From NCBI RefSeq assembly GCF_023055435.1, contig NW_025964372.1, forward strand, positions 38,564,001 to 38,628,000: DNA of 64,000 nucleotides, given 5' to 3'. Position 1 is the stretch's first letter. Each line of letters starts with the position of its first letter. Below the pieces are notes generated by a model that did no database searches, was not told the DNA's origin, and saw only the letters and a list, made by a program, of their open reading frames with translations. Below, in pieces: positions 314-43,515 of this stretch. Made by a program: the position numbers and the translations under genes. Source of the DNA: Haliotis rufescens (Eukaryota).

Positions 314-412
314 AGCTTTCGGCCATGGGAGCTGTGCCAATTTACACACGTCAGAGGGGTAGAAAAAGTACGTGATCTGGACTACCAGTTATTGGATTTT
401 CATTTTGTGGAA

Positions 413-9214: not shown

Positions 9215-9283
<69 letters not shown>

Positions 9284-9544: not shown

Positions 9545-11395
9545 ATGTCCGGTGAGAGCCGAAAATCTGGATATGTGGACAACTGGCAGTCAGGGAAGAC
9601 TGTCACAGAGTGTAATCTGCGCATGCTCGACACGGAAGACTTCTGTGACGTCACTTTCCTGTTGGGGTCAGAGAAACAGGTGGTCCGAGCTCACCGCTAC
9701 GTTCTTGTCAGTCGCAGCTGTGTCTTCCATGCCATGCTCTGTGGCCCCCTGGCGGAGAAAGGGGAGGTAACCATTCCTGACATTGCGGCAGACATCTTCA
9801 AAGAGTTCCTGAGGTTCGATTAATCTTTTAATTTTACAAAACAATCAAATACCCAATGACAAAACACCTTCCATTTGTCTTTGCGTGATATATACCAATG
9901 TCTCAAAGTCACTTGGCAGACAGAAATGTATTCCTCCACAATGAGGGTCCATTTAATATTTCCTTGAAGTGTTCAGTCATCCTGCGTCATCAAGGTAGCC
10001 TAGTTGTATCTGTGATACATGACTACCCGACCAAGCACGTCTGAAGTAAGAATATCATGTAGGTTAACATATAAAGGTTACTATAAACGTCCTCACTACA
10101 GAATAACCAGTATGAATTATCCCACGAAACAGATTCCATTGGGTGTAAAAGGCAAAGTGGCGATGAACATGTTGTAAATGGATCACTGAAATGTCTGAAC
10201 AAGTGACATATATAAAAGACAACCTAACCTGATTGTGCTATTTGGATTTGAATTAAGTTGAAAAATATCATGAAACCTTGGTTGTAATTAATCGTAACAT
10301 GGTAATCTTACACACTGTTGTAGGTATGTGTACACAGAAAAGACTACTATCAACACTGAAACAGTCACAGGACTGATGTACACCTCCAGGAAGTATTCTC
10401 TAGATGCATTGTACGATCTGTGTGTAACGTTCCTGGAGACGTCCCTGTCAGAAGACAATGTCTGCCAGATCCTGGAGGAGTGTCATGGTTACGAGGAGCT
10501 AGACCTGGAACAGAAGGCCCTGAAGATCCTGACTGAAGGAGGGGAGAGTGTCATCAAATCTCCAGGATTTGTTAGTCTTTGTCCTGACTGTCTGGAAAAG
10601 TTCCTTAAATCAAACACTCTGAACCTGAAAGAGTCAGACATATTTGAAGCAGTCGTATCGTGGACAAAGGAGCGGTGCAGGAAGGAAGGTGTGAGTGACG
10701 CGCCTGAGAACAGACGGAGACTCCTAGGAGATATGAGGTATCAGATCCGGTTTACCAGCATCCCCCTGGAGATCCTGGTGAAAGTTGTTGGCCGATCTGG
10801 TGTGCTGACAAACAGTGAGAGAGTTCAGATAATTGACAGATCTGTTGACTCGACTGTTGATATTTCTCCATTTACAACTGTACAGAGAATGAAATCAGGC
10901 GTTGCTCAGATACAAGAGTCCTATATTTGTAAACATGTAAGCAGATTTCCATATATGTCAGAATGTTGGTATTCTGCTAATACACGCTTCAGGCATGCTA
11001 TCTCGTTTTCTGTCACTCACAGCATTCACCTGAAAGGATGTCAGCTCTTCCGTGAACAGAGTAATGAAGATATCCTACTGATTATATGGGTGTATGACCA
11101 AAATAACACAGTGGTTGCTGCACCCTTACGGAACACTTGGCTGACTCTTCACAGGAACCAAAAGATGACTGATGTCCTATTTCCCGAGTCTGTACTACTG
11201 CAGCCAAGCAAAACCTACACTCTGTGTGTGGACCTAGCTCCCGGTAAGTATTACAGCGGTGTTCATGGAAAGAAGACTGTAACCAGTGATGGAGTACAGT
11301 TCACTTTCTCACACTCCCCACTTGACACTGCAGGAACATCACCACAGTGTGGAAACATACCTGGCTTGATATTCAGCATCCCAACAGAGATGTAG
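9545..11395 (+). CDS. BTB-BACK-PHR protein, BTBD1/2/3/6-like, copy G1; join(9545..9813,10324..11395), 446 aa
   Basis: BTB motifs NWQ..., DVTFLLG, AHRYVLVSRSCVFHAM. AG|GT donor after 9813 and TAG| acceptor before 10324 rebuild FLRYVYT. BACK region (ESDIFEAVVSW, IRF) and PHR motifs (SRF..W, AISF, TYT..V, GTS...GNIPGLIF). The reading frame is open. Confidence 0.92.
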
Positions 11396-12709
11396 TGTGT
11401 GAATTCATGGTGAAACTGTCAATTCTTCCACTCAACCATGGGATGAGATAATGACCACAACATTCAGCTAACATCCTGTGTGCTGTTTGTACAGGATTTG
11501 ATGTGAATACTTTACTGAAATTTGAATTGGATGTACTTTTAAACAACACTGACAGCTTGTGCATTGTATGTTACGTTCACATGTAACATCATTTCCGTTT
11601 CATAGTTTCCATAGATTGACTGTCTGCCTGTGTGATAATGTGATTTACATATCAAATAATGAAATATTGTACTACACACTGGAGTGTTTTAATGTTTCGA
11701 TTGCAGCTTAACACATCTTCTTACATCAAGTGACGCGTGCATGTGTAAGCGTTACTGTTATGAATGTACAGAGATGTTGCTCCAAGCTGTGTACAGTGAT
11801 TAGCCCCTGCCTACAGAAACAAATACCTTGTTGGGTTGTGTTTCGCCGTTGTCAGACATTCTTTATATATAGACTCACAACACCAGATACACTTCCAAAT
11901 TTCATTTTAATCATAATATTTCAATTACTAAATACAGTTAAGTTAGCGAGAAAATAAGTCAATTCTTAACATTAAGTTCACTGATGGCCTATACTCGGTT
12001 CTCTGCAAACACGGGTTCGTCTATTCAAATAAATATAACTTTAGCCAAAAACATATTGGGAATTAGTCAGGCAGGGTAGGGTGACTACGGCAGTCTGTAA
12101 TTTGTTGTCTCCAATCTAGGACCTTTACAACTTAAACTGTAACGGATTTGTTTTCTTCTCTCATGATCAGTGTACACACACACACGCACGCACGCACACA
12201 CGCACACACACACACACACGCATGCACGCACGCACCCCAAACAAAACAAACAAACTGTCGTCATTGTTCCTGGCGTTGATAAAATACTTGGCAATTTATG
12301 AAGTCAATGTCTTGCTGAACTATGTACCAATCCAGATATGCAGAAAATTATCAGATTGTAGAGCTTTCTTTTTGATATTGCATCTTTAAATTATTGATTG
12401 TACCTACAACTCACATCAAAAGGAGGGACCATGGTGATAGAAAGCCAGCAACTCATTAATGTGATTACTACATCAATATTGACATTAAGTATGGGACATT
12501 GCACCTGTAATTCTGTTTGTGTAACCTGAACATATTATTTGAATCACCTGCGCTAGAAACATACTTTCCGTCACTACGCAAGCGAGCTACATTCATGTGA
12601 TGTTCAATATATCTCAATAAAAACTGCGGATATTATTGTTATTATTGTTAATAACCATGTCTAACCAGGTTGGCGTCTCTGCGCAGAGGGTATGGTGGCT
12701 TAGCATTGG

Positions 12710-12734
12710 TTGTTATTGTTGATCCATCGTCCAG

Positions 12735-12766
<32 letters not shown>

Positions 12767-12791
12767 CTGGACGATGGATCAACAATAACAA
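12710..12791. repeat. Perfect 82-bp palindrome with (AT)n centre (72-bp copy at 44913-44984)
   Basis: TTGTTATTGTTGATCCATCGTCCAGTT-(AT)n-AACTGGACGATGGATCAACAATAACAA. Confidence 0.95.
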
Positions 12792-14069
12792 TATTCGTTA
12801 TATATACAGTCTTTAACGAATAAGGTCAATAAAAAAGTAAAGAGACATGATAAAAAAATTAGTAAACGTTAATTGATTTTAATTAACTTGAGGAAACTAC
12901 TCATACCTTCAGAAATTTGTATTTGACCATCATTTACACACGCTACAAGATGCCCTTTTAAAAATACATACATAATTTAGTATCTAAAGAGGACCAGCCC
13001 ATACGATATTCTTATGATGGAAAAACTGCCAGTATTCGAAACAGCTCTTCTTAATATTTGAGAGTAGATAGGCCCTAAGTTTATGCTTGTATGGTAACCA
13101 TGAACACACAATGCCATTTAGAAAGTGGTCAAATGTAACAAATGTTACATTTGGGATAACTATTTCTGAGTAAAGTACAGATTCTCGTACATTTTCTGAG
13201 CGCCGTCCTGGATTCGAACCCATACTTACAGAGTGAGTACGAGATTCTGTACTTTACTCAGAAAGTGTGATCCCAAATATAACACTTGTTACTTTTAACC
13301 ACTTTCTAAATTGCATTGTGCTTTCATAGCTTTCGGCCATGGGAGCTGTGCCAATTTACACACGTCAGAGGGGTAGAAAAAGTACGTGATCTAGACTACC
13401 AGTTATTGGATTTTCATTTTGTGGAAGCCTCTGTGGCTGAGTGGGTTAGATCGCTGACTATGTGTGCTGGCGATTAGGTGCCTCACTCTTGCAGTGTGGG
13501 TTCGAATCCCGGAGTATTGTCGAATTATAGATTATTATTTTAATTGTTCGCAACTAGTTTTACTTCTAAACTGTGATAGTCTAGTTATTATACTGTCCGT
13601 CGTTAACAGAGTTTATTCATCTAAGTTTAAATTGCATTAATGTTCTCGTCACTATATGGCTGAAATAAAAATGACGTAAAATTTTAACTCACTCACTCGA
13701 ATTTCGGACGGGACTCAACCCCCAAACGTACAGGAATCTGTACTTAACTCAGAAAGTGTTACATGGTAACCACGGCCTGTAGAAAATATAGTAAAGCGTC
13801 CATGGTTGACTTGGGGTAAAGGCAAGTGGTGGTGTAGCGACTTGAATTAAATGTGTTTGATGCCAATTTGTGTGAGCATAATCCCCTAAATGTATTCTCG
13901 TACTAATCGAAAACAAAAATATACAGAAGGTCCTGTTTTGCAAAGAATGGGTTGCCTAAAATGTAGCAGCTTTGGTTGGCTCTACATATGAGGATCTGGA
14001 ACCGAATTGAGCATGATTCATTTCTTGATAAATAATCATATTATAGTGTGATCTTATCTCGATTCCATC

Positions 14070-14607
14070 CAGTGTTCATGTAGACTTTACATTTAGTGTT
14101 CATGTAGTCTTTTCATTAAGTGTTCATGTAGTCTTTACATTTAGTGTTCATGTAGTCTTTTCATTTAGTTTTCATGTAGTCTTTACATTTAGTGTTCATG
14201 TAGTCTTTTCATTAAGTGTTCATGTAGTCTTTACATTTAGTGTTCATGTAGTCTTTTCATTTAGTGTTCATGTAGTCTTTTCATTTAGTGTTCATGTAGT
14301 CTTTTCATTTAGTGTTCACGTAGTCTTTTCATTTAGTGTTTACGTAGTCTTTTCATTTAGTGTTCATGTAGTCTTTTCATTTAGTGTTCGTGTAGTCTTT
14401 TCATTTAGTGTTCATGCAGTCTTTACATTTAGTGTTTTTGTAGTCTTTTCATTTAGTGTTCATGTAGTCTTTTCATTTAGTGTTCGTGTAGTCTTTTCAT
14501 TTCGTGTTCATGCAGTCTTTACATTTAGTGTTTTTGTAGTCTTTTCATTTAGTGTTCATGTTGTCTTTTCATTTAGTGGTCACGTAGTTTTTTCAATTGG
14601 AGTTCAT
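14070..14607. repeat. 24-bp minisatellite, ~22 units
   Basis: Duplicate of 1056-1593. Confidence 0.95.
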
Positions 14608-16451
14608 ATCACCACAAGTTGACATTTATATAGTTCGTGTCGTATCGGGGTATTGAGTGAATGCGTCACATGGTTGCTATGAGACAGGAGTGTGGACGTG
14701 AGACGCAGCAAAACAAGAAGTGGAGAAGTATCGTCGGCTGTTACAAATGCACACGGCGCCCACAGCTTCACTTGTTGTTTTGCTGTGTGTAAATAGATGT
14801 CACGTTATTGGTCAGCTAGGGTGTTTTAGTTGAAACATTATTTATATTTCTCAATAAACCGGAGTGATAGTTTTATATCAGTCATGTAGTATACAACCCA
14901 AATGACGTGAACAAAAACATTCTATCTTTGTAGAGAGGAAAGAGACACATCTTTCAGTGTCCCCTGCTATTTCTTGAATGACTATCTGTGGCGACTAATG
15001 GGATCGGGTATTCAGACTCGCTGACGTGGTTGTTTCATGTCTTCGTATCCCAATGCATCACTGCAGAAAATGATTGCGGGAGCGGATGTATGTTGTTTGA
15101 CCAGCCGACACTATTCCAGTTTTATCACTGCCTGTAAATAATTGAATCTTAGAAAGGCATACAAGAGGTTTAAAACAACGATCCACCCGTTAGGAGTAGG
15201 ATCCCAATCAATCAGCCAGGAAACTACCCGACCCCTGTCGATCAGATCTTTCCATTGAGTGAGTGAGTGAGTGAGTGAGTGAGTATGGTTTGACGCCGCT
15301 TTAAGCAATTTTGCAGCCATATAAAGGCACCCATGTTGGGCATCGAACCCGGGTTTAAGGCGTGACGAGCGAACTCCTTAACCACTAGGCTATCCCATCG
15401 CTACTAGATCCGACATTTGTGGAGAACTCGTTGAGTTTGGTTGGTGGCTTTTTATGGTTCATTATTTACATAGCTGGCAACAAACAACGTTTGTTTTTTA
15501 AGAATATAAGGGGTCACAACATGCCGTGTCGTCGGTGCAGTGTCCTGTGCAGAGTTGCGTCCCTTAGGCTAACCGGAAACCTATGATTGTAAGTTCGAAT
15601 CTCATATTCAACCTGATTGGGCGTTTTAGCACCATATTCGTTCTCATTGGTTTCACCAACCTCGCGGACATGTGCTATGTGGATTTAAATCTCGTTTTTG
15701 TTGTTTCTGTCAGGTACAATTGATAATTTCATCAAAATCTAAAAGGTGAAAGGCAGAGGACAATTCACCCATGTCCCAATAAAAACTGTTAGGCGTGTAA
15801 CATATGGACTGTGTAACAATAGGATGGATACAAAACGAGAAGCGCTGGAAAAAATAGAGGTTGAAATGTTTAATGAAGCGTCACATGATATATGATTTAC
15901 ATCACACTTTTGGAATAAAACATCTGTAGTAGTAGACATCAGCTCGACTGCTCAGTCATGGTAGTCGTAGTAGTGAGTGAGTATGGTTTTACGCCGCTTT
16001 AAGCAATAGTTCAGCAATATCACGGCGGAGTAGCAGTAGTTGTAGCAGTAGCAGTATTGGTATTGACAGTAGCAGTAGAAGCAGGCAGTACAATAAGTAG
16101 CAGTAGGTGTAGTAGTAGCAGTATTTGGTATTGATAGTAGTAGCAGCAGAGAGCACTAGTAGTAGCAGTAGCAGTAGTAGTGAACAGAACAGTAGCAGTA
16201 GCTGTAGTAGTAGCAGAAGCTGTAGCAGTGACGGCGATAGTGATAGGATTCGTATGAAGGGAAGTTGCCTGAAGGAGTACTATATGACTGGGTCTGACTA
16301 TAACACATCTATAACGTACTTTCACATTTAGTCTGTACACATGAAACAGAGCGAACATGACTATAAGTATAACAACATTGACTTGAAAAGTGTGAGGCAG
16401 GTGAAGAGGTAGTTCATCAGGTATGAAGCTGGCACGTGACTGAAGAGGAAG

Positions 16452-18169
16452 TCAGCGTTTTCTCAGTCTCTGTGTCTCCGTCGCGCCATCCTTGGTCTGA
16501 GCCTGGGAACAAAAACAAGCACAGAGTAAGGCCAAGTCGTCTGAGTCACCGCAATTCGCTGTGCAGGGTTGTGTCCCTTGACGTGCCGAACTTATGATCG
16601 TGGGTTCGAATCCCAGACTCGCCTTCATAATGACGCTTGGTTTGCCGCTTAGAAGTCTTTCACAAGTAATCTCGAAGTCTGGGGCTCCCATGGACCATAT
16701 AAGGCATCATTTTGCAACACTGCTGAACCGGATATACAAATACCTTGTTTAAATATTTAGTTGAGTAAAAACAATTCTTGAGCTAGCTAAGTTCTCAAAA
16801 TAGTGGCTTTATTAAATAGTGTTGCGAACATTAGGCAATAAGTTCTTTACAAGTTGGCATTACATTGATGCGTGGAGCTCAATAGAAGTTGTGATTGACA
16901 CTGCTTTTAACAGTATTACAGTTATATCACGGCGTGTCAGCTCAATGTTGGAGGAAAGTCCGAAGTGATGCAGGTCTGTGACGTTTAGCACTTCGGTGAC
17001 ATCCACGAGAACGGGTATGATGCTGACAAACCTAGATACATAATCGGGGCGAACCGAGATTCGAACCCACAATCATAGGTTTCTGGAGTGCCCAAGGAAC
17101 GCAACTCTGCACTGCGAATCGCGGCGCCTTAGACGACTGGGCCACCCATGCCCCCTCAATAGACGTAATCCTGATTGGGAACAACATCTGTATATTATCA
17201 GATTGCTTTAGAGCTTTGACAACGCTATCTATTTTATGACAAATCATCTCAAACGATAAGGAAAGATATATCGAATTAATGGAGCGTTACTGTATAAGAA
17301 ATGAGTGTAATTGGTGAAATTATGAAGAATACTGAATAGTATTTATGAAACAGAAAGGTCATCTTAGGAACGCGATATCCAACATACACAAGAGCGGATT
17401 TAAGGAATCGGATCCCACTCCAACCCTGAAGTTAAACATGTTTGTTTGTTTGAGTCTGGACCAGACAATCTCGTGATTGACACCATGAGCATCGATCCAC
17501 GTAAATGGGATACAATTCCAAGTCACCGAGCGTGACCACGCAATCCATTTATTCGCCTCGGACGACAAGCTTATGTTGCTGGGGACGTATATTCTTTACC
17601 GGAATCCCCAGGGGTAGTTAAACATGGGAACCACCCACCGTATTAATACCTCTCCCTGGGGACAAAAGATTCAGAAAAGTCTGAGAATTTCAATTTCACA
17701 TGTATGTAGGTACGTTCAAAAGATTTCATTATGATATTAGATCTAGACCAAGGTAAGTATTCATTTCACTCAATACTTCACGGGCTTGTGGAGGAACTTT
17801 GGGGACGGAGCAATGGAGTAAAATGTGCCCTACTGAAGCAATGTGTGGAGTACATGGCCATAAGTACTTTACATGCTGCACGGAAAATATTGTTCTGTCA
17901 TCTCTGAGCGGTCATTGGTTATGCTTTCCCTCTTGCTGGAAGGAGGTCGTGTCTTTATTGGTCGGTTTGTAATAACAACTACATCCCTAAAAGCGGTCGT
18001 ATGTATTCACGGTAAAGGGAGGAGCGCAGTGTATACAAACAAGTGATGTTTTGACGAAGGATGAAATGACTTATTGTAATGACGAAGTCTCCATCTCTAT
18101 CCAAGTGCATGATGACACCGTTCTTGTCTTGAGTCATCTTCTCGATGAAGAGTTCGTTTCGTAGAGGCT
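16452..18169 (-). pseudogene. Orphan FABP-A exons 3 (18075..18169, disabled) and 4 (16452..16502, intact)
   Basis: Same lesions as the 3438-5155 copy. Confidence 0.85.
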
Positions 18170-18265
18170 CTGAAACAAGTAGGAAAGTAGGAAAGATGTT
18201 TATAAACATAATGCAGATACACAGATGAATTGTTCTTGACCATAAGCGCGAGATGCCCAACTCTC

Positions 18266-21704: not shown

Positions 21705-21740
<36 letters not shown>

Positions 21741-32707: not shown

Positions 32708-32760
<53 letters not shown>

Positions 32761-34143
32761 CACTTACATGTAAGTACAAAAATCTTGAACACAACGTTGA
32801 ACCCCATTTCACCTCGTCTAGAACTGTAAAAAAATGATCCATTGATTGACGGAGTTGTCCTCCGTTTGATATGAACTGAAGCGCACATAAAATATACACC
32901 TGGAAAGCGGAAGTCTTGTCAAAACGAAACAAGGATTACAGTTGTCAGACAGGTGAAGGACACTCTCTCGCGCCCTGTGTTCAAATCATCGGCACCAACT
33001 CAGGTAAGGGGTAAACTGTTCACACAACTGTACTGAACAATGGTTTTTCTGGTGTAGAATGTGTTGCGGTATTTACCAGATTTAGTACTGTACACTCAGT
33101 TGTTGACAACACAGCCACACCCTGTTAGATATACAACTGCAGATATTGTAACAGTCATTTGTCAGTCAGTCAGTATCACATAGATCAGGTGATACTTAAC
33201 ACAGCTGCCGACTGTCCCGTGATTACGCGTGTGACTGTTTGTGACTGAAGCCATATTGAAGTGGAAGTAAACCATGTGTGGAATCCACAGAGTAAATCGT
33301 TACAAGGAGTTTGTGTTAGACTCAAGAGTTGTGTCCCTTTGATCATCTTGTGCAAGTCAAAACATGCACCTGTCTTCATACGTTCATTGTGACTTGAGTT
33401 GTAAACATTTATGGTTAGTGGCTTGGTCGTTGTCTCGCATATTTGTGCTTTAAACACTGAATAAGGTTGACTGTTAAAGGGCGGAAATGTGATTTTGTTC
33501 GATTGAAATAGTGAAGTATGACACTTGAGTATGGGTAACTGGACAGTTGTTGGTTTCATCTGAACATATATCCAGATGTCGACCCTCACGCTTGCAAGGG
33601 CATCTTCATCGAGGGTAAGAAAAACAATTATAGGTGACCGGCACTGTGCACAAACACCTTAACTTGCCAATTTGACGGTTATGGTTCTAGTTGTGTACAT
33701 GTGGGTTTTTTTGTTATTGTTTGTTTGTTTGTTTGTTTGTTGGAGGGGGGGGGGGGGGGGGGGGGGGGGGTTGTTGGTTGGTTGTGTGACTGGCTGAACA
33801 AAACGATACTCGAGGTTAACGATGTCCATTATCTTTACAGAGTTGTGTCCTTTTGATATTCATCCTCACCATCTGCACTACAGGCATCTGATTCACTTTG
33901 TATGTAAGACACTTGAGGTTTGTACATTTTAATGTTTAAAAGTGTGTCAAAAGTCGTCTTTGGGTATGCATTTTTAATAGGGTTGCAAAGTTGCGTGAAA
34001 TATAATTGTATAGACTAAGATAGTGATGTTTGACACTTTACTGGATAGTTGTAGATTTCATCCAACATAAGGTATCAGAAACTGATATCTGACCTACGAA
34101 GAAACTACCTCAATTTGCATTTATTGCTCATTTTCAGATAGGC

Positions 34144-34213
<70 letters not shown>

Positions 34214-34474
34214 AATTGTTGTCTGGCAATGCTCAAAAGTGATTTATAAGTGCATTTGCAAAGGGCAAAACAGTGATGAACATTATGTGAATAGACTCCT
34301 GAAAACACCATGCAAAGTGTAGCTGATTCTGTAGGTTTTGATTTAAAAGAAGTGAATTTTAATACTCATGCAGTTAATATCTTATAATGGAATGGTTATG
34401 TATATTTAAGGTTTAAATCATCTACTCACGGCTTATGTCTGTATATTCCTGTATTGTCAGTTCCAAGTTTCGCA

Positions 34475-36359
34475 ATGTCCTGTGAGAGCCGAGAATCTGG
34501 ATATGTGGACAACTGGCAGTCAGGGAAGACTGTCACAGAGTGTAATCTGCGCATGCTCGACACGGAAGACTTCTGTGACGTCACTTTCTTATTGGGGTCA
34601 GAGAAACAGGTGGTCCGAGCTCACCGCTACGTTCTTGTCAGTCGCAGCTGTGTCTTCCATGCAATGTTCTGTGGCCCCCTGGCGGAGAAAGGGGAGGTAA
34701 CCATTCCTGACATTGCTGCAGACATCTTCAAAGAGTTCCTGAGGTTCGATTAATCTTTTAATTTTACAAAACAATCAAATACCCAATGACAAAACACCTT
34801 CCATTTTACTTTGCGTGATATGTACCAATGTCTCCAAGTCACTTGGCAGACAGAAATGTATTCCTCCACAATGAGAGTCAATTTAAACTGTATGAATTTG
34901 CATATTTCCTTGAAGTGTTCAGTCTTCCTGCGTCATCAAGGTAGCCTTGTTGTATCTGTAATACATGACTACCCGACCAAGCAAGTCTGAAGTAAGAATA
35001 TCATGTAGGTTAACATATACAGGTAACTATAAACGTCCTCACTACAGAATAACCAGTATAAATTATCCAACGAAACAGATTCCATTGGGTGTAAAAGTCA
35101 ATGTGGCGATGAAAATTTTGTAAATGGATCACTGAAATGTCTAAACAAGTGTCATATATATAAGACAACCTAACCTGATTGTGCTATTTGGACGTGAATT
35201 AAGTTGATAAATCTCATGAAAGCTTGGTTTTAATTACTCGTAACATTGAAATCCTACAAACTGTTGTAGGTATGTGTACACAGAGAAGACTACTATCAAC
35301 GCTGAAACAGTCACAGGACTAATGTACACCTCCAGGAAGTATTCTCTGGATGCATTGTACGATCTGTGTGTAACGTTTCTGGAGACGTCCCTGTCAGAAG
35401 ACAATGTCTGCCAGATCCTGGAGCAGTGTCATGGTTACGGGGAGCTAGACCTGGAACAGAAGGCCCTGAAGATCCTGACTGAAGGAGGGGAGAGAGTCAT
35501 CCAGTCTCCAGGGTTTGTAGATCTCTGTCCTTGTTGTCTGGAAAAGTTCCTCAAATCAAACACTCTGAACCTGAAAGAGTCCGACATATTTGAAGCAGTC
35601 GTGTCGTGGACAAAGGAGCGGTGCAGGAAGGAAGGTGTGAGTGACACGCCTGAGAACCGACGGAGACTCCTGGGAGATATGAGGTATGAGATCCGGTTTA
35701 CCAGCATCCCCCTGGAGTATCTGGTGAAGGTTGTCGGCCGATCTGGTGTGCTGACAAACAGTGAGAGAGTTCAGATAATTGACAGATCTGTTGACTCGAC
35801 TGTTGATATGTCTCCATTTACAACTGTACAGAGAAAGAAGTCGGGCGTTGCTCAGATGCAGGAGCTCAATATTTATAAACATGTAAGCAGATTTCGATAT
35901 GCGTCAGATTGTTGGTATTTTGCTGATACAATCAGCAGGCATGCTATCTCGTTTTCTGTCACTCACAACATTCACCTGAAAGGATTTCAGCTCTACCGTG
36001 AAGAGAGTAATGACGACTTCCTACTGAGTATAAGGGTGTATGACCAAAATAACATAGTTGTTGCTGAACCCTTATTGAACACATGGATGACTCTTCACAG
36101 GAACCAAGAGATGACTGATGTCCTATTTCCCGAGTCTGTACCACTGCAGCCAAGCACAACCTACAGTCTGTGTGTGGACCTACATCCCGGTAGCTATTAC
36201 ACTGGGTTTGATGGAAAGAAGACTGTAACCAGTGATGGAGTACAGTTCACATTCTCACACTCCCCACTTGACACTGCAGGAACATCACCACAGTGTGGAA
36301 ACATACCTGGCTTGATATTCAGCATCCCAACAGAGATGAAGTGTTTGAAAAGATGGTGA
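34475..36359 (+). CDS. BTB-BACK-PHR protein copy G3; join(34475..34743,35270..36359), 452 aa
   Basis: Same exon structure, splice sites and motifs as G1; intact frame. Confidence 0.92.
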
Positions 36360-38850
36360 TACTGTCAATTCTTCCACTCAACCATGGGATGAGATAATGA
36401 CCACAACATTCAGCTAACATCCTGTGTGCGTTTGTACAGGATTTGATGTGAATACTTTATTGAAATTTCAATTGGATGTACTTTTAAACAACACTGACAG
36501 CTTGTGCAATTGTATGTTACGTTCACATGTTACATCATTTTCGTTTCATAGTTTCTATAGATTGACTGTCTGCCTGTGTAATAATGCGATTTACATATCA
36601 AATAATCAAATATTGTACTACACACTGAAGTGTTTTAATGTTTCGATTGCAGCTTAACACATCTTCTTACATCAAGTGATGCGTGCATGTCTAAGCGTTA
36701 CTGTTTTGAATGTACAAAGATGTTGCTCCAAGCTGTGTACAGTGATTAGCCCCTGCCTACAGAAACAAATACCTTATTGGGTTGTGTTTCGCCGCCGTCA
36801 GACATTCTTTATATATAGACTCACAACACCAGGTACACTTCCAAATTTCATTTTAATCATCATATTTCATTAATTAAATACAGTTAAGTTAGCGAGAAAA
36901 TAAGTCAATTCTTAACATTAAGTCCAAAAATGGCATACTCGGTTCTCTGCTAACACGGGTTCGTCTATTCAAATAAATATAATGTTAGCCAAAAACATAA
37001 TGGGAATAAGTCAGGCAGGGCAGGGTAACTACGGCAGTCTGTAATCGTTGTCTCCAATCGAGGACCTTTACAACTTCAACTGTAACGGATTTGTTTTCTT
37101 CTCTAATGATCAGTGTACACACACACACGCATGCACGCACGCACGCAAACAAAACAAAACAAACAATCTGTCGACATTGTTCGTGGCGTTGATAAAATAT
37201 TTGGCAATATATGAGTTCAATGCCTTGCTGAACTATGTCCCAATCCAGATATGCAGAAAATTATCAGATTATAGAACTTTCTTTGGCAATATATTAATTC
37301 AGTGCCTTGCTGAACTATGTCCCAATCCACATATGCAGAAAATTATCAGATTATAGAACTTTCTTTGGCAATATATTAATTCAGTGCCTTGCTGAACTAT
37401 GTTCCAATCCACATATGCAGAAAATTATCAGATTATAGAACTTTCTTATTGATATTCCACTTTTAAATTATTGATTGTACCTGCAGCTCACATCAAAAGG
37501 AGGAACCATGGTGATAGAAAGCCAGCAACTCATTAATGTGATTACTACATCAATATTGACATTAAGTATGGGACATTGCACCTGTAATTCTGTTTGTGTA
37601 ACCTGAACATATGATTTGAATCACCCCCGCTAGAAACATACTCTCTTTCACTACGCAAGCAAGCTACATTCATGTGTTATTCAATAAATCGCAATACAAA
37701 CTGCAGATATTATTGTTATTATTGATAATAACCATGTCTAACTAGGGCACAGAGGGTATGGTGGCTTAAAATTGGTTGTTGGTGATCCATCGTCCATTTA
37801 CATATTGTGCCGTCCCTCATCTGTTTTATGTTCTAAATAAACCTAAAACAGTAAAAACTGTGATATATTACTACTACCCCTTGGTGACAGTTTGGTATCA
37901 TAATATAAATACATAGATTTTTCATCTCACGATATGGCTGAAATATTGGCGAAGGGAAACTAAAACTTGACTCACTCACTCATTCATTAAGATATCACTG
38001 ACGAAACAAAGAATATTTTGAGAAATGGACCATCAAACACTTGCTTCGATCTCACCCTCTAAATGTAATGTTCATCCCTCCCTCCCCCGCCAAATGGCTG
38101 ACGCACCATGTGGAGTACAACCTGGGATCATGGGATCGGGTTTTCAGACTCGCTGACCTGGTTGTTTCTTGTCTTCGTATCCGAATGCATCTCTGCAGGA
38201 AATGATTGAGGGAGCGGGTGTATGTTGTTTGACCAGCCGATAGCATCCCAGTTTTATCACTGCTTGTAGGTAATTGGTTATGATGACAAACAATCAGCCA
38301 CGTTGCCGGGGAATCTCGGAATCCCCAGGGGTAATTAACCATGGGAACCACCCATCGTATTCATACCTCTCCCTGGGGACAAGGTGTTCAGATAAGTCCG
38401 AGAATTTCAATTTCAGATGCATGTAGGTATGTCAAAATAGTTTAAAACCATAAGATTCCATTATAATATTTGACCAAGGTAAATATTCATTTCACTCAAT
38501 GCTTCACGGGTTTGTGGAGGAGCCTTGGGGGCAGTGCAGTAGTGGCGTGTGTCAACCCATTAAATGAGGCCGTGTTACCCCATAGAAGTAAAAAAGCCCT
38601 ACTGAAGCAATGTGTGGAGTACATGCCCGTAAGATAATTTTGGATGCTGCACGGAAAATATTGTGCTGTTTGTGCTATGTCATGTCTGAGCGCCCATTGG
38701 TCATGCTTTCCCTCTTGCTAGAAGCAGGTCGCGTCTTGATTGGTCGGTTTATAATAGTAGCTACTCCCAAAGCGGGAGCATGTATTCACTGGTAAGGGGG
38801 GAACAAACCAGTGATGTTTTGACGAAAGATAAAAGGCTGAGCTGACTTAC

Positions 38851-38964
38851 TGTAATGGCGAAGTGTCCATCTCTGTAGGTGTCCACGTCCGAGTGCATGA
38901 CGTCCCCGTTCTTGTCTTGAGTCATTTTCTCGATGAAGTGCTCGTTCCGTGAAGAGATCAGGCT
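38851..38964 (-). pseudogene. Orphan FABP-A exon 3 (in frame, 6 substitutions); exon 4 deleted in this unit
   Basis: Encodes SLISSRNEHFIEKMTQDKNGDVMHSDVDTYRDGHFAIT; TAG acceptor and GTAAGT donor are retained. Confidence 0.8.
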
Positions 38965-41649
38965 CTAAACAAGTCGAAACGACGTTGATGAACATAACGT
39001 AGATACACAGATGACTTGTTCTTGACCATAAGTGCGAGATGTTCAACACTGTTCCGCTAGCGTTGTCAGCCCACTTTTGGGTCATGTCAGAATGACCTTT
39101 CATCCGACCAATCAGAGTGTCGGCAAAGTGATAGTTGGATGTGATTTCTAATCCTGCAACATCAGAAATGTTAATACATGGTATTCTGAACGACAGTTAC
39201 GGTCTGTACGACTGATGCCGTCAAAATCATCACCCATCTCTCGCTTCAATGGGATAAACATTTAAAACAGAAGACTTTCCACACTGTCTTGCAAACTCGG
39301 CATCTATTAGACCTTCAAGTTTCTTTAGTTTAGTATTCAAATTTTGAATCGATATTTTTCAGAGCTAGTCTGGAATGGAAGTCGCCGGTTTGACACTGGC
39401 TGCTTTCTGACTGGCATATGTTGTAAGTAATTTCATTGGTAAGTCAAAGTTCGCGAAAGGTCGTTCTGACGTGACCTGTATTGGGATGTCCTCAGATCTC
39501 CGTGTATCGGTAGCGAGCACTAAGATCTCATTTTAATAAGATTGTAAGCGACACGTTTGATTAGGTTGTCCATTTGAATTAACGTTTCATGTGTCTGGGC
39601 AACGTAATTCGATTTTCCTCCAAATTGACAGGTTTATGCTCCTATTGCCTACAGTTCATGGTTCAGGGCACACAATTGCAAAACCTTTATCCCTAAATCG
39701 TAATTTCTCTGTGCCAGTGCACCCTGTTCACGTAAAACCAAAATACGTTATTTTTGGTATGTGTTGTTATCCTTGCTGTCACGTGGGTACGCACACACAC
39801 ACACACACATACACGCACTCGCACACGCACACACAAAGGCACACACACACACATGCACTTTCATGTAAGTACAACAATCTTGAACGAAACGTTGAACCCC
39901 ATTTCAACTCATCTGGAACTGTACAAAATCGACCCAGTGATTGACGGAGTTGTCCTCCGTTTGATATTAACTGAAGCGCACATAAAATTTACACCTTGAA
40001 AGCGGAAGTCTTGTCAAAACGAAACAAGGATTACAGTTGTCTGACAGGCGAAGGACGCTCTCTCGCGCCCTGTGTTCAAACCATCGGCACCAACTCAGGT
40101 AAGGGGTAAACTGTTCACACAACTGTACTGAACAATGGTTTGTCTGGTGTAGAATGTGTAGCGGTATTTACCAGATTTAGTAGTTTACACTCAGTTGTTG
40201 ACAACACAGCCACACCCTGTTAGATATACAACTGCATATATTGTAACAGTCATTTGTCAGTCAGTCAGCTTCACATAGATCAGGTGATACTTAACACAGC
40301 TGCCGACTGTCCTGTCATTACGTGTGTGACTGTTTGTGGCTGAAGCCATATTGAAGTGGAAGTAAACCATGTGTGGAATCCACAGAGTAAATCGTCACAA
40401 GGGTTTTGTGTTAGACTCTAGAGTTGTGTCCCTTTGATCATCTTGTGCAAGTCAAAATATGCACCTGTCTTCATACGTTCATTGTGACTTGAGTTGTAAA
40501 CATTTATTGTTAGTGGCTTGGTCGTTGTCCCGCATATTTGTGCTTTAAACTCTAAATAGGGTTGACTGTTAAAGGGACGAAATGTGATTTTCTTCGATTG
40601 AAATTGTGAAGTATGACACTTGAGTGAGTGAGTGAGTTGTGTTTAACGCCGCTTTTAACAGTATTCCTATGACACTTGAGTATGGGTAACTGGACAGTTG
40701 TTCGTTTCATCTGAACATATATCCAGATGTCGACCCTCACGCTTGCAAGGGCATCTTCATCGAGGGTAAGGAAAACATTTATGGGTGACCGGCACTGTGA
40801 ACAACTCAATTTGCCAATTTGACGGTTGTTGTTGTAGTTGTGTACATCTAAGCGACTATATGTNNNNNNNNNNNNNNNNNNNNNNNNNNNNNNNNNNNNN
40901 NNNNNNNNNNNNNNNNNNNNNNNNNNNNNNNNNNNNNNNNNNNNNNNNNNNNNNNNNNNNNNNNNNNNNNNNNNNNNNNNNNNNNNNNNNNNNNNNNNNN
41001 NNNNNNNNTGTGTGACTAGCTGAACAAAACGATACCCGAAGATAACGATGATTACAGAGTTGTGTCCTTTTGATATTCATGCTCACCATCTGCAGTACAG
41101 GCATCTGATTCACTTTATATGTAAGACACTTGAGGTTTGTACATTTTAATGTTTAAAAGTGTGTCAAAGTCGTCTTTGGGTATCTTTTGATAGGGTTGAC
41201 TGTAAAGATTCGTGACACATAATTGTATAGGCTAAGATAGTGAAGTTTGACAATTTACTGGATATTTGTAGATTTCCTCCAACATTAGGTATGAGAAACT
41301 GATATCTGGCCTTCGAAGAAAGTACCTAAATTTGCATTTACCGTTCATTTTCAGATAGGCGTGTATCATATATATATATATAAAAACAATTGTTGTCTGG
41401 CAATGCTCAAAAAGTGATTTATAAGTGCCTTTGCAAAGGGCAAAACAGTGATGAACATTATGTGAATGGACTCCTGAAAACACCATGCAAAGTGTAGCTG
41501 ATTCTGTAGGTTTTGATTTAAAACAAGTGAATTTTAATACTCATGAAGTTATTATCGAATAATGGAATGGTTATGTATATTTAAGGTTTAAATCATCTAC
41601 TCACGGCTTTTATCTGTATAATCCTGTATTGTCAGTTCCAAGCTTCGCA

Positions 41650-43515
41650 ATGTCTGGTGAGAGCCGAGAATCTGGATATGTGGACAACTGGCAGTCAGGG
41701 AAGACTGTCACAGAGTGTAATCTGTGCATGCTCGACACGGAAGACTTCTGTGACGTCACTTTCCTGTTGGGGTCAGAGAAACAGGTGGTCCGAGCTCACC
41801 GCTACGTTCTTGTCAGTCGCAGCTGTGTCTTCCATGCAATGTTTTGTGGCCCCCTTGCGGAGAAAGGGGAGGTAACCATTCCTGACATTGCGGCAGACAT
41901 CTTCAAAGAGTTCCTGAGGTTCGATTAATCTTTTAATTTTACAAAACAATCAAATACCCAATGACAAAACACCTTCCATTTTACTTTGCGTGATATATAC
42001 CAATGTCTCGAAGTCACTTGGCAGACAGAAATGTATTTCTCCACAATGAGGGTAAATTTAAACTGTATAAATTCGCATATTTCCTTGAAGTGTTCAGTAA
42101 TCCTGCGTCATCAAGGTAGCCTAGTTGTATCTGTATACATGACTACCCGACCAAGCAAGTCTGAAGTAAGAATATCATGTAGGTTAACATATAAAGGTAA
42201 CTATAAACGTCCTCACTACAGAATAACCAGTATGAATTATCCCACGAAACAAATTCCATTGGGTGTAAAAGTCAGTGTGGCGATGAACATGTTGTAAATG
42301 GATCACTGAAATGTCTGAACAAGTGACATATATATAAGACAACCTAACCTGATTGTGCTATTTGGATGTGAATTAAGTTGATAAATCTCATGAAACCTTG
42401 GTTTTAATTGCTCGTAACATTGAAATCCTACACACTGTTGTAGGTATGTGTACACAGAGAAGACTACTATCAACACTGAAACAGTCACAGGACTAATGTA
42501 CACCTCCAGGAAATATTCTCTGGATGCATTGTACGATCTGTGTGTAACGTTTCTGGAGACGTCCCTGTCAGAAGACAATGTCTGCCAGATCCTAGAGCAG
42601 TGTCATGGTTACGGGGAGGTAGACCTGGAACAGAAGGCCCTGAATATCCTGACTGAAGGAGGGGAGAGTGTCATCAAATCTCCAGGGTTTGTAGATCTTT
42701 GTCCTTGTTGTCTGGAAAAGTTCCTCAAATCAAACACTCTGAACCTGAGAGAGTCAGACATATTTGAAGCAGTCGTGTCCTGGACAAAGGAGCGGTGCAG
42801 GAAGGAAGGTGTGAGAGACACGCCTGAGAACAGACGGAGACTCCTGGGAGATATGAGGTATGAGATCCGGTTTATCAGCATGACCCTGGAGGTCCTGGTG
42901 AAGGTTGTAGGCCGATCTGGTGTGCTGACAAACAGTGAGAGAGTTCAGATAATTGACAGATCTGTTGACTCGACTGTTGATATTTCTCCATTTAAAACTG
43001 TACAGAGAATGAAATCAGGAGTTGCTCAGATACAAGAGTCCAATATTTGTAAACATGTAAGCAGATTTCAATATATGTCAGAATATTGGCATTCTGCTAA
43101 AACACGTTGCAGGCATGCTATCTCGTTTTCTGTCACTCACAACATTCACCTGAAAGGATGTCAGCTCTACCGTGAACAGGGTAATGAAGACATCCTACTG
43201 AGTATAAGGGTGAATGACCAAAATGACATAGTTGTTGCTGCACCCTTATGGAAGACATGGATGACTCGTCACAGCAACAAAGAGATGACTGATGTCCTAT
43301 TTCCCGAGTCTGTACTACTGCAGCCAAGCACAACCTACACTCTGTGTGTGGACCTACCTCCCGGTAACTATTACAGGGGGGTTGATGGAAAGAAGACTGT
43401 AACCAGTGATGGAGTACAGTTCACCTTCTCACACTCCCCACTGGACACTGCAGGAACATCACTACAGTGTGGAAACATACCTGGCTTGATATTCAGCATC
43501 CCAACAGAGATGTAG
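41650..43515 (+). CDS. BTB-BACK-PHR protein copy G4; join(41650..41918,42444..43515), 446 aa
   Basis: Same exon structure, splice sites and motifs as G1; intact frame. Confidence 0.92.

What the first reader, a model, noticed from the sequence alone, without database searches (positions are those of the whole stretch)
9545..43515. Tandem array of BTB-BACK-PHR (Cullin-3 adaptor) genes with a constant BTB module and hypervariable PHR patches: candidate diversified recognition/ubiquitination repertoire
Seen: four intact paralogs whose BTB exon differs at only ~4 residues, while the PHR domain varies in discrete patches. After SRF: PYMSECWYSANTRF / PNITECHCYFQGS / RYASDCWYFADTIS / QYMSEYWHSAKTRC. 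Second patch: REQSNED / REEINED / REESNDD / REQGNED. Third: LRNTWLT / LRNTLKS / LLNTWMT / LWKTWMT. Fourth: LAPGKYYSGVH / LTSGTYYSGVF / LHPGSYYTGFD / LPPGNYYRGVD. Fifth: SPQC / SPET / SPQC / SLQC. Intervening strands (RHAISFSVTH, MTDVLFPESV, GVQFTFSHS, GNIPGLIFSIP) are invariant. Established: in BTBD1/2/3/6 proteins BTB-BACK binds Cul3 and PHR is the substrate-binding beta-sandwich, and nematode F-box and MATH-BTB expansions show a constant cullin-binding part with a positively selected substrate domain. Inference: this is an analogous invertebrate system, possibly targeting pathogen or transposon proteins for degradation.
Basis: partly seen in the sequence, partly recalled or inferred. Interest (0 to 1): 0.85.

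Follow-up and report, generated by a model that had tools for sequence, protein, structure and literature searches.

The report
Abalone BTB-BACK-PHR genes, hypervariable PHR loops
Red abalone carries over a hundred tandemly duplicated genes for a cullin-3 ubiquitin-ligase adaptor whose ligase-docking half is kept constant while a few loops of the C-terminal PHR domain change faster than neutral DNA, which suggests a diversified set of intracellular target-recognition proteins.

Summary
The window (Haliotis rufescens, red abalone) holds exactly four intact BTB-BACK-PHR genes. Each has canonical GT-AG introns and sits in a 7-13 kb tandem repeat unit. Both assembly gaps are intergenic. The four genes belong to a 7-gene local array and to a family with at least 110 matches genome-wide. 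RefSeq already names them "BTBD6-like", and BTBD6 tandem expansion is published for vent snails, so the expansion itself is not new.

What appears to be new is the selection pattern:
- BTB and BACK are under purifying selection (dN/dS 0.2-0.4).
- The PHR domain has dN/dS of about 1.5. About 15% of its codons have omega 4-10 (M2a vs M1a likelihood-ratio statistic, LRT, 57; p 5e-13).
- Amino-acid-changing divergence across the PHR is two to four times intron divergence.
- Four independent arrays give the same result (PHR LRT 39-117; the N-terminal part is non-significant in three). The selected positions in the two nearest arrays coincide (p 2e-7).

Gene conversion between copies is evident. The stricter cross-validated test is only marginal (p 0.03 and 0.13).

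The likely role is a set of Cul3 adaptors with diversified PHR specificity. The scan had earlier noted two related points on this same window, and both agree.

The parts
8899..8971 (+). G1 upstream exon 0 (approximate; 5' UTR or alternative N-terminal extension)
   Evidence: tblastn with the first 29 residues of RefSeq isoform P0003. A GT donor follows by homology with G4. The exon lies 50 nt after gap 8719-8849.
9531..9813 (+). G1 exon 1: ATG at 9545, first 90 codons (N-terminal tail and most of the BTB domain), GT donor at 9814
   Evidence: identical to public protein P0001
10324..11395 (+). G1 exon 2: end of BTB, BACK, linker and PHR (PHR is about 10940-11392), with stop codon
   Evidence: AG acceptor at 10322-10323; Pfam BACK and PHR
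10949..10990 (+). G1 hypervariable patch 1, codons 299-312 (predicted beta2-turn-beta3 hairpin)
   Evidence: Posterior above 0.9 for omega>1 at codons 299-304, 307, 309, 311 and 312. The same segment is selected in the three other arrays. Strand assignment.
11051..11071 (+). G1 patch 2, codons 333-339 (beta4/beta5 loop)
   Evidence: Variable in the alignment. Codons 334-336 are selected in the 47-Mb array.
11126..11167 (+). G1 patch 3, codons 358-371 (end of beta6 and beta6/beta7 loop)
   Evidence: Codon 359 is selected locally and 368-371 in the 47-Mb array.
11234..11266 (+). G1 patch 4, codons 394-404 (beta8-beta9 hairpin)
   Evidence: Codons 395, 398, 401 and 404 are selected locally. Codons 393-401 are selected in the other arrays.
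11339..11350 (+). G1 patch 5, codons 429-432 (long loop before the last strand)
   Evidence: Codons 431 and 432 are selected locally. Codon 432 is selected in the 47-Mb and C556 arrays.
21361..21433 (+). G2 exon 0 (starts with ATG, 24 of 24 residues identical to the N-terminus of P0003)
22044..22326 (+). G2 exon 1 (ATG at 22058)
22803..23889 (+). G2 exon 2 (BTB end, BACK, PHR; 5-residue C-terminal extension)
33831..33903 (+). G3 exon 0 (approximate)
34461..34743 (+). G3 exon 1 (ATG at 34475)
35270..36359 (+). G3 exon 2 (BTB end, BACK, PHR; 6-residue C-terminal extension)
41048..41120 (+). G4 exon 0 (ATG at 41048, GT donor at 41121), 40 nt after the gap
41636..41918 (+). G4 exon 1 (ATG at 41650)
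   Evidence: protein identical to P0002
42444..43515 (+). G4 exon 2 (BTB end, BACK, PHR)
20601..20779 (.). Assembly gap, intergenic, about 1.3 kb upstream of the G2 ATG; same relative place as gap 7608-7784
   Evidence: corresponds to a (GT)n tract in the G3 unit
40864..41008 (.). Assembly gap just upstream of G4 exon 0 (promoter region); same relative place as gap 8719-8849 in the G1 unit
   Evidence: the ungapped G3 unit has (GTTT)n + poly-G there (33700-33785)
8850..50900 (+). Four tandem repeat units. The G1 unit spans about 8850-21364, the G2 unit 21365-33781, the G3 unit 33782-40953 (shortened to 7.2 kb), and the G4 unit from 40954 with its tail to about 50.9 kb. Positions 1-8849 are the tail of the preceding unit.
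   Evidence: Self-BLAST of the window gives 90-96% identity between units.

Best explanation
The region is part of a tandem array of intact, paralogous BTBD1/2/3/6-type genes in red abalone. Seven genes lie locally, four of them in the window. They belong to a family of more than 100 loci arranged in many arrays.

The N-terminal BTB-BACK module is the part that docks on cullin-3 and dimerises. It is held nearly constant by purifying selection, and gene conversion between copies adds to its uniformity. A small set of positions in the C-terminal PHR beta-sandwich is driven apart by diversifying selection. These positions lie in the beta2-beta3 hairpin, the beta4/5 and beta6/7 loops, the beta8-beta9 hairpin and the loop before the last strand.

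The most likely mechanism (inferred, not shown) is as follows. Each paralog is a Cul3-RBX1 substrate adaptor whose PHR loops determine which protein is bound and ubiquitinated, so the family is a germline-encoded repertoire of different specificities. Because the BTB dimer interface is the same in all copies, mixed dimers between paralogs are plausible.

The class of targets is unknown. It could be pathogen, transposon, reproductive or other fast-evolving proteins.
For: Shown:
- Domains and fold. Pfam BTB, BACK and PHR are present in all copies. The sequence matches the BTBD6 BTB (2VKP, E 5e-18) and the BTBD2 PHR (3NO8). The AlphaFold model has pLDDT 93. It superposes on KLHL11 BTB-BACK (TM 0.73), the BTBD2 PHR (0.86), the MYCBP2 PHR (0.83-0.91) and the BTBD6 BTB (0.89).
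- Intactness. All 7 local genes, and 27 of the 30 loci modelled, have an open two-exon CDS with GT-AG borders.
- Domain contrast. Pooled pN/pS is 0.23 for BTB, 0.41 for BACK, 0.50 for the linker and 1.51 for PHR. PHR dN is 0.08-0.18, against 0.02-0.07 for the intron and 0.02-0.11 for the 3' flank. Nucleotide divergence peaks inside the PHR coding part and drops right after the stop codon.
- Site models (own implementation). In 16 simulations under the null model the largest LRT was 3.95. For the local PHR, M2a vs M1a gives LRT 56.6 (p 5e-13; omega 9.9 at 17% of codons), while BTB-BACK-linker gives 0.65. The result holds on three topologies. It also holds without patch 1 (LRT 27.6) and with M8 vs M7 or M8a.
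- Replication in three other arrays. PHR LRT is 117 in the 47.4-Mb array (13 genes), 38.7 in the C556 array (11 genes) and 39.7 in the 45-Mb array (6 genes). The N-terminal part gives 12.9, 2.6 and 2.3.
- Same positions. The selected positions in the local and 47-Mb arrays overlap: 10 are shared between sets of 18 and 16 out of 152 codons (p 2e-7).
- Unambiguous single-difference codons in three independent pairs. Patches have 4 synonymous and 54 nonsynonymous (0.040 per synonymous site, 0.135 per nonsynonymous site; binomial p 0.005). BTB-BACK has 42 and 48 (Fisher p 1.5e-7).
- Family-wide entropy is 0.38 for BTB, 0.54 for BACK and 1.31 for PHR.

Inferred:
- Cul3 docking. The motif L69-A70-E71 aligns with the KLHL3 M-S-E Cul3-contact motif (alignment; the role of the motif is from my own knowledge of the SPOP, KLHL3 and KLHL11 complexes). 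Zebrafish Btbd6 BTB-BACK binds the Cul3 N-terminal domain directly (10.1101/575910).
- Dimerisation. The G1xG4 BTB heterodimer model scores 0.85 against a best control of 0.14. That mark was reached by 51 of 78 solved complexes and 2 of 108 mismatched pairs. The runs agree in at least 98% of contacts and the partner's pLDDT is at least 91. This shows likeness to known BTB dimers, not binding.
Against: - A stricter test lets the candidate sites have their own synonymous rate and picks them in a different array. It gives omega 5.5 (p 0.028) for the local array. For the 47-Mb array it gives only omega 1.66 (p 0.13), and the tree there is saturated.
- Recombination or gene conversion is evident. 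The PHR data fit the N-terminal tree worse by about 48-54 lnL units, and G1 and G4 are identical around the stop codon. Recombination can inflate site-model tests.
- 19 of 77 differing patch codons carry 2-3 changes, and multi-nucleotide changes can also inflate these tests.
- The codon models are my own code, not PAML or HyPhy.
- No RNA evidence could be obtained.
- PHR as a substrate-binding domain is unproven in this protein family. The one case worked out uses the BTB domain instead.
- About half of the selected sites lie in predicted strands (beta2, beta9) rather than loops. Whether they form one surface is unknown.
Confidence: 0.66

Rival explanations
1. There is no adaptive diversification. 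The copies are redundant duplicates whose PHR loops are simply unconstrained, while repeated gene conversion homogenises the rest of the unit. The loops then look 'faster than neutral' only because the neutral yardsticks (intron, flanks, synonymous sites) were recently reset.
For: - Conversion is real. Different parts of the gene give different tree topologies. G1 and G4 show 0% divergence over several hundred bases around and after the stop codon.
- PHR codons outside the selected set have omega of about 0.9-1.4, which is indistinguishable from 1.
- The reverse cross-validated test is not significant (p 0.13).
Against: - With omega=1 the nonsynonymous rate per site cannot exceed the synonymous rate in the very same codons. 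Yet the patches show 0.135 against 0.040 (4 synonymous vs 54 nonsynonymous; p 0.005).
- M2a and M8 beat models that already include a neutral class in four independent arrays.
- Nearly all copies keep open frames and conserved core strands.
- The same positions recur in independent arrays.
Confidence: 0.12
2. Diversifying selection is real, but the PHR loops are not degradation-substrate receptors of an immune-like system. One possibility is that the family takes part in a reproductive or intragenomic conflict, as germline-expressed adaptors do in other tandem BTB expansions. Another is that the PHR sets localisation or binds a regulator, while substrates are captured through BTB heterodimerisation as in Btbd6-Plzf.
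For: - Btbd6 binds Plzf through its BTB domain. Its PHR promotes nuclear localisation and does not bind Cul3 (10.1101/575910).
- The proteins have no signal peptide or membrane segment in the model, so they act inside the cell.
- Abalone are known for fast-evolving reproductive proteins (own knowledge).
- Nothing here links the genes to infection.
Against: - A nearly invariant BTB would give all paralogs the same BTB-mediated partners. That leaves the PHR diversification unexplained unless the PHR binds something that varies.
- There are no expression data to favour the germline over somatic tissues.
Confidence: 0.2
3. The copies are assembly artefacts: haplotypes or collapsed repeats laid out in tandem.
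For: - The unit ahead of G1 and the G1 unit are 99.2% identical over 7.6 kb (1-7607 vs 13015-20600), with gaps at the same relative place.
- The gene upstream of the window (Gm1) differs from G1 by only 7 of 1072 bases in exon 2. That pair could be two alleles.
Against: - The four window copies differ from each other by 5-8% in nucleotides, with many indels. Unit lengths differ (12.5, 12.4 and 7.2 kb) and so do the C-terminal extensions. This is far above allelic divergence.
- Distinct RefSeq proteins exist for G1 and G4.
- Related arrays are annotated in three other Haliotis genomes.
Confidence: 0.02

Closest known systems
Vertebrate BTBD1/BTBD2/BTBD3/BTBD6 (BTB-BACK-PHR Cul3 adaptors)
   Same: The three domains occur in the same order. 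The BTB is 42% identical to the human BTBD6 BTB structure 2VKP, and the PHR superposes on the BTBD2 PHR 3NO8 (TM 0.86). RefSeq names the genes 'BTBD6-like'.
   Different: Vertebrates have four genes (10.1101/575910), and to my knowledge these are conserved and dispersed. Abalone has more than 100 in tandem arrays, with hypervariable PHR loops. One-to-one orthology to BTBD6 was not tested.
BTBD6 tandem expansion in deep-sea vent snails (Chrysomallon squamiferum 56 copies, Gigantopelta aegis 35; PMC7736800)
   Same: It is the same gene family, also in gastropods, with tandem clusters on one chromosome.
   Different: That paper reports copy number only and reads it as nervous-system adaptation to vents. 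It gives no per-domain or per-site selection analysis. Abalone is a shallow-water vetigastropod with at least as many copies, which argues against a vent-specific explanation.
Nematode MATH-BTB (BATH) and F-box families; grass MATH-BTB expansion
   Same: These are lineage-specific tandem expansions of cullin adaptors. The cullin-binding domain is under purifying selection and positive selection is concentrated in the substrate-binding domain. (Thomas 2006, Genome Res, from my own knowledge; cited in PMC4334554 and PMC8120010.)
   Different: The variable module here is a PHR beta-sandwich, not MATH or FTH/FBA2. The phylum is Mollusca. No link to immunity is known.
TRIM5/TRIM22 and fish finTRIM B30.2/SPRY E3 ligases
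   Same: The ligase module is constant, and a beta-sandwich recognition domain has a few hypervariable, positively selected loops. The genes lie in tandem clusters (PMC2151084, listed; otherwise own knowledge).
   Different: The ligase type differs (RING in the same polypeptide vs a Cul3 adaptor). The fold family differs (SPRY vs PHR). Antiviral function is proven there and untested here.

Membership tests
BTBD1/2/3/6 (BTB-BACK-PHR) protein family | N-terminal BTB/POZ domain | tested here: met
   PF00651 scores E 9e-13 on exon 1 and continues into exon 2. The domain matches 2VKP (BTBD6 BTB) with E 5e-18 and TM 0.89.
BTBD1/2/3/6 (BTB-BACK-PHR) protein family | BACK domain directly after the BTB | tested here: met
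   PF07707 scores E 2e-9 to 6e-9 in all four copies. The model superposes on KLHL11 BTB-BACK 3I3N with TM 0.73.
BTBD1/2/3/6 (BTB-BACK-PHR) protein family | C-terminal PHR (PAM/Highwire/RPM-1) beta-sandwich | tested here: met
   PF08005 scores E 1e-18 to 1e-21 over the full profile length. The model superposes on 3NO8 (TM 0.86), 3GBW (0.83) and 3HWJ (0.91).
BTBD1/2/3/6 (BTB-BACK-PHR) protein family | Binding of the cullin-3 N-terminal domain through BTB plus 3-box | not testable with these tools
   Only indirect evidence is available. The conserved L69-A70-E71 aligns with the KLHL3 M-S-E motif. The BTB and the first BACK helices have low entropy. Btbd6 BTB-BACK binds Cul3 in vitro (10.1101/575910). 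No abalone Cul3 sequence was available for a complex test.
BTBD1/2/3/6 (BTB-BACK-PHR) protein family | BTB homodimerisation | tested here: inconclusive
   The predicted G1xG4 BTB dimer scores 0.85 against a best control of 0.14. That mark was reached by 51 of 78 solved complexes and 2 of 108 mismatched pairs. The pass may reflect memory of solved BTB dimers.
Adaptively evolving cullin-adaptor expansions (MATH-BTB / F-box type) | Lineage-specific tandem expansion | tested here: met
   At least 110 matches occur in arrays on C594, C556, C112, C1 and C212. The local array has 7 genes.
Adaptively evolving cullin-adaptor expansions (MATH-BTB / F-box type) | Cullin-binding module under purifying selection | tested here: met
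   dN/dS is 0.18-0.44 for BTB and 0.30-0.37 for BACK, within and between arrays. M2a is not better than M1a in three of the four arrays.
Adaptively evolving cullin-adaptor expansions (MATH-BTB / F-box type) | Positive selection at a subset of sites in the presumed substrate-binding domain | tested here: met
   PHR LRT is 39-117 in four arrays, with omega 3.8-9.9 at 14-18% of codons. The stricter cross-validated test gives p 0.028 and 0.13.
Adaptively evolving cullin-adaptor expansions (MATH-BTB / F-box type) | Selected sites cluster on one binding surface | tested here: inconclusive
   The structure tool returns no coordinates. By strand parity in the DSSP string, four of the five connections at one end carry selected sites (309-311, 333-338, 365-370, 395-396). 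However, selected sites also lie in strands beta2 and beta9 and in three connections assigned to the other end.
Adaptively evolving cullin-adaptor expansions (MATH-BTB / F-box type) | Expression and a role in defence or conflict | not testable with these tools

The most novel reading that the evidence does not exclude
The PHR domain is a previously unrecognised hypervariable recognition scaffold. Abalone, and probably other gastropods with BTBD6 expansions, would then use more than 100 germline-encoded BTB-BACK-PHR adaptors as an intracellular, immune-like repertoire. This repertoire would direct pathogen, virus or transposon proteins to Cul3 for ubiquitination. Mixed dimers through the constant BTB domain would multiply the number of specificities.
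Probability: 0.3. Interest if true: 0.8.

Novelty: new variant of a known kind. Interest (0 to 1): 0.62.

Why it matters
Expanded cullin adaptors with positively selected recognition domains are thought to be intracellular surveillance systems in nematodes and plants. Their targets are still mostly unknown.

This finding would add a third recognition fold (PHR) and a new phylum (Mollusca) to that class. It offers a different reading of the published gastropod BTBD6 expansions, which were attributed to the nervous system.

It also gives the first evolutionary hint about where the PHR domain contacts its partners. The function of that domain in BTBD1/2/3/6 and in MYCBP2/Highwire/RPM-1 is poorly understood.

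Abalone are farmed and are threatened by withering syndrome and herpesvirus. A diversified intracellular recognition family would therefore be a natural candidate for resistance mapping.

Tried and rejected
- **Patches imported by gene conversion from distant paralogs.** Rejected for the 20 non-local paralogs in hand. Every patch is closer to a local copy (60-95% nucleotide identity) than to any non-local one (38-81%) (the script stopped before patch 5).
- **Local hypermutation of the patches.** Nei-Gojobori pS looked raised in the patches (0.155 vs 0.041). Counting only single-difference codons gives 0.040 synonymous changes per site, the same as elsewhere. The excess was therefore a path-averaging effect in multi-hit codons.
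- **Recent conversion between arrays as the reason for the constant BTB.** Introns are unalignable between arrays although exon 1 is 85-89% identical. Purifying selection is therefore the main cause. A between-array dS gradient remains partly unexplained (BTB 0.25 to PHR 0.89).
- **Literature.** No paper was found on positive selection in PHR domains, or on these genes in Haliotis.
- **Mapping selected sites in 3-D.** The structure tools return no coordinates, so only a strand-parity argument was possible.
- **Spliced proteins.** Searches used exon references or the public protein ids. Exons were joined only inside scripts for codon analysis.

Full report
**What is there**

The window is Haliotis rufescens (red abalone) sequence, at C594:38,564,001-38,628,000 of a 1.33-Gb assembly. 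It contains exactly four paralogous genes on the + strand:
- G1: ATG at 9545, first coding exon to 9813, second exon 10324-11395.
- G2: 22058-22326 and 22803-23889.
- G3: 34475-34743 and 35270-36359.
- G4: 41650-41918 and 42444-43515.

All have a GT donor and an AG acceptor splitting codon 90 in phase 2. All have open frames of 446-452 codons. A short conserved exon lies about 600 bp upstream of each ATG (for example 41048-41120 in G4). It matches the N-terminal extension of a RefSeq isoform.

Pfam finds BTB (interrupted by the intron), BACK and PHR in every copy.

**Gaps**

Both flagged gaps are intergenic. Gap 20601-20779 is about 1.3 kb upstream of the G2 ATG. In the ungapped G3 unit the same place holds a (GT)n tract. 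Gap 40864-41008 is 40 bp upstream of G4 exon 0. In the G3 unit the same place holds (GTTT)n plus a poly-G run of more than 30 bases (33700-33785). The flanks of the gap are colinear with that unit. No coding frame depends on a gap. The promoter regions of G1 and G4 are incomplete. I did not try to fill any gap.

**Genomic setting**

The genes sit in tandem repeat units of 12.5, 12.4 and 7.2 kb that are 90-96% identical. The units also carry a 24-bp minisatellite and, in two of them, a MULE transposase fragment.

Three more copies lie upstream of the window, so the local array has seven genes. The nearest upstream copy is 99.3% identical to G1 in exon 2. Its unit is 99.2% identical over 7.6 kb, with gaps in the same places. 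That pair could be a very recent duplication or two haplotypes assembled in tandem. The four window copies differ by 5-8% with many indels, so they cannot be explained that way.

Genome-wide, a six-frame search finds at least 110 matches. They are grouped in arrays on C594 (41.3, 45.1-45.45, 47.42-47.65 and 49.36-49.42 Mb), C556 (21.74-21.90 Mb), C112, C1 and C212. Of the 30 best loci, 27 give an intact two-exon CDS with canonical splice sites.

**Identity**

[quoted passage not shown] Dozens of similar proteins are annotated in H. rufescens, H. rubra, H. asinina and H. cracherodii.

By sequence, the BTB matches the BTBD6 BTB structure 2VKP (E 5e-18) and the PHR matches the BTBD2 PHR 3NO8. An AlphaFold model built on 92 homologues has mean pLDDT 93. 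It superposes on:
- KLHL11 BTB-BACK (TM 0.73),
- BTBD2 PHR (TM 0.86, rmsd 2.1),
- MYCBP2 PHR1 and PHR2 (TM 0.83 and 0.91),
- BTBD6 BTB (TM 0.89).

Membership in the BTB-BACK-PHR family is therefore met on all three defining domains.

**Constant versus variable parts**

Nei-Gojobori counts over the seven local genes give pN/pS of 0.23 (BTB), 0.41 (BACK), 0.50 (linker) and 1.51 (PHR). PHR dN is 0.08-0.18, compared with 0.02-0.07 for the intron and 0.02-0.11 for the 3' flank. A sliding window shows 2-4% nucleotide divergence through exon 1 and the intron. Divergence peaks at 10-15% inside the PHR coding part and drops to 0-5% right after the stop codon.

Across 26 paralogs on this chromosome, mean identity between the local genes and the other paralogs is 84% in BTB, 75% in BACK and 41% in PHR. 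Introns are unalignable between arrays while exon 1 stays 85-89% identical. The constancy of the BTB is therefore mainly purifying selection.

**Formal tests**

PAML and HyPhy are not available, so I wrote a Goldman-Yang codon likelihood with M0, M1a, M2a, M7, M8 and M8a. Its behaviour under the null was checked with 16 data sets simulated under M1a, where the largest LRT was 3.95.

For six local genes:
- M2a against M1a gives LRT 53.9 on the whole gene.
- On the PHR part with its own tree it gives 56.6 (p 5e-13), with omega 9.9 at 17% of codons.
- On BTB-BACK-linker it gives 0.65 (p 0.72).

The PHR result is stable on three different topologies (LRT 56.6-68.9). It is also stable without the indel-bearing patch 1 (27.6; p 1e-6) and with M8 against M7 or M8a (56.7 and 56.6).

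Three other arrays, analysed independently, replicate it:

| Array | Genes | PHR LRT | N-terminal LRT |
|---|---|---|---|
| C594 47.42-47.64 Mb | 13 | 117 | 12.9 |
| C556 21.74-21.90 Mb (about 31% identical to G1) | 11 | 38.7 | 2.6 |
| C594 45.2-45.45 Mb (about 27% identical to G1) | 6 | 39.7 | 2.3 |

Sites with posterior above 0.9 in the local and 47-Mb arrays overlap: 10 are shared between sets of 18 and 16 among 152 codons (hypergeometric p 2e-7). In the two distant arrays they fall again in segments 304-313, 393-401 and 420-432.

**Caveats on selection**

*Recombination.* Gene conversion is evident. The N-terminal part and the PHR give different trees, and forcing the N-terminal tree on the PHR data costs about 48-54 lnL units. 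G1 and G4 are identical around and after the stop codon. Recombination can inflate site tests.

*Multi-hit codons.* 19 of 77 differing patch codons carry two or three changes.

*A stricter test.* I chose the candidate codons in one array and estimated a single omega, with their own branch lengths, in the other. The local array gave omega 5.5 (p 0.028). The 47-Mb array gave omega 1.66 (p 0.13), with a saturated tree.

*A model-free count.* Three phylogenetically independent pairs, using only codons that differ at one base, give 4 synonymous against 54 nonsynonymous differences in the patches. That is 0.040 per synonymous site and 0.135 per nonsynonymous site (binomial p 0.005). BTB-BACK-linker gives 42 against 48 (Fisher p 1.5e-7). 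This count also removes an apparent excess of synonymous change in the patches seen with path-averaged counts, so local hypermutation is not needed.

*Donors.* No patch is closer to any of 20 non-local paralogs than to a local copy.

Overall I rate diversifying selection on a subset of PHR positions at about 0.85.

**Where the variable sites lie**

In the model the PHR has twelve strands. The selected sites are:
- 299-304, 307, 309, 311 and 312 (strand beta2, the turn and the start of beta3),
- 334-336 (beta4/5 loop),
- 359 and 368-371 (beta6 and the beta6/7 loop),
- 395, 398, 400, 401 and 404 (beta8-beta9 hairpin),
- 431-432 (the long loop before the last strand).

The three lowest-confidence blocks inside the PHR (pLDDT 84-86) coincide with patches 1-3. 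By strand parity, four of the five connections at one end of the sandwich carry selected sites, and three connections at the other end never do. But selected sites also lie in two strands and in three connections assigned to the other end. The tools return no coordinates, so 'one surface' remains untested.

**Mechanism**

*Shown:* the architecture, the fold, the intactness of the genes, the purifying selection on BTB-BACK and the diversifying pattern in the PHR.

*Inferred:* the proteins dock on Cul3 through BTB plus the first BACK helices. L69-A70-E71 aligns with the M-S-E Cul3-contact motif of KLHL3 (the role of that motif is from my own knowledge). Zebrafish Btbd6 BTB-BACK binds the Cul3 N-terminal domain directly, whereas its PHR does not (10.1101/575910).

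A predicted G1xG4 BTB heterodimer scored 0.85 against a best control of 0.14. That mark was reached by 51 of 78 solved complexes and 2 of 108 mismatched pairs. The runs agree in at least 98% of contacts and the partner's pLDDT is at least 91. The interface residues are almost all invariant among the copies. This shows likeness to known BTB dimers, not binding. It does make mixed dimers between paralogs plausible.

That the PHR binds the substrate is an analogy. The same preprint shows Btbd6 capturing Plzf through the BTB domain, and it states that little is known about PHR interactions. The target class is open.

**What is known and what is new**

- The genes are annotated.
- Tandem BTBD6 expansion is published for two vent snails, with 56 and 35 copies, and was read as nervous-system adaptation (PMC7736800; repeated in 10.1101/2025.10.31.685756).
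- The general principle, a constant cullin-binding module with a positively selected recognition domain in expanded adaptor families, is known from nematode MATH-BTB and F-box genes and from TRIM/SPRY ligases.
- I found no report of positive selection in a PHR domain or of this family in abalone. The held library lacks most subscription journals.

I therefore class this as a new variant of a known kind.

As a result there is no evidence on expression, and no nucleotide-level comparison with other Haliotis genomes.

At protein level, the partial black-abalone relative P0013 differs from G1 at six positions in the last 79 residues. Three of these are selected sites (404, 431, 432). This comes from reading side by side and is anecdotal.

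**Earlier notes of the scan**

Two notes on this same window agree with what I measured. One says the PHR coding part is more divergent than the DNA after the stop codon. The other says G1 is a mosaic.

Noticed in passing
window 1-7607 vs 13015-20600: Two 7.6-kb stretches are 99.2% identical, with assembly gaps at the same relative position (7608-7784 and 20601-20779). The gene upstream of the window differs from G1 by 7 bases in exon 2 (4 nonsynonymous and 3 synonymous differences over the whole CDS, none in the PHR). This is either a very recent unit duplication or two haplotypes laid out in tandem.
   Followed up: partly
window 26648-28115; also 1057-1593, 14071-14607, 46264-46920: A minisatellite with a 24-bp period (86-94% between repeats) is present in every repeat unit and expanded to 1.5 kb in the G2 unit. 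It produces a long spurious ORF (27498-28142).
   Followed up: no
window 5615-6073 and 18629-19087, minus strand: There is a MULE transposase domain fragment (PF10551, E 7.5e-9) in the two near-identical units only. It is a transposon remnant carried along by the unit duplication.
   Followed up: partly
window 33700-33785: A (GTTT)n tract followed by a poly-G run of more than 30 bases lies directly upstream of exon 0 of G3. The same place is an assembly gap in the G1 and G4 units, so the promoter-proximal region of this gene family is systematically hard to sequence.
   Followed up: partly
window 51940-52677, 53613-54312, 55799-56668: Three further minisatellites lie downstream of the array, with periods of about 80, 22 and 60 bp. 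The last gives three overlapping ORFs of 246-343 codons that are repeat artefacts.
   Followed up: no
local array vs C594 47.4-Mb array (loci L001-L028): Between arrays, synonymous divergence rises along the gene: dS is 0.25 in BTB, 0.50 in BACK, 0.70 in the linker and 0.89 in PHR. The introns, however, are unalignable. Part of the gradient may be a counting artefact at multi-hit codons. Otherwise it would mean exon-limited conversion or constraint on synonymous sites in the 5' part.
   Followed up: partly
window 61700-63400: Four assembly gaps are embedded in (CA)n-rich sequence at the end of the window.
   Followed up: no
G000:C6:309863-310903 vs C594:42247553-42248593: These two matches have practically identical scores (380.0 vs 380.3 bits, 53% identity to G1), one on a small contig and one on the chromosome. 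The small contig may be an unplaced haplotig of the same locus.
   Followed up: no
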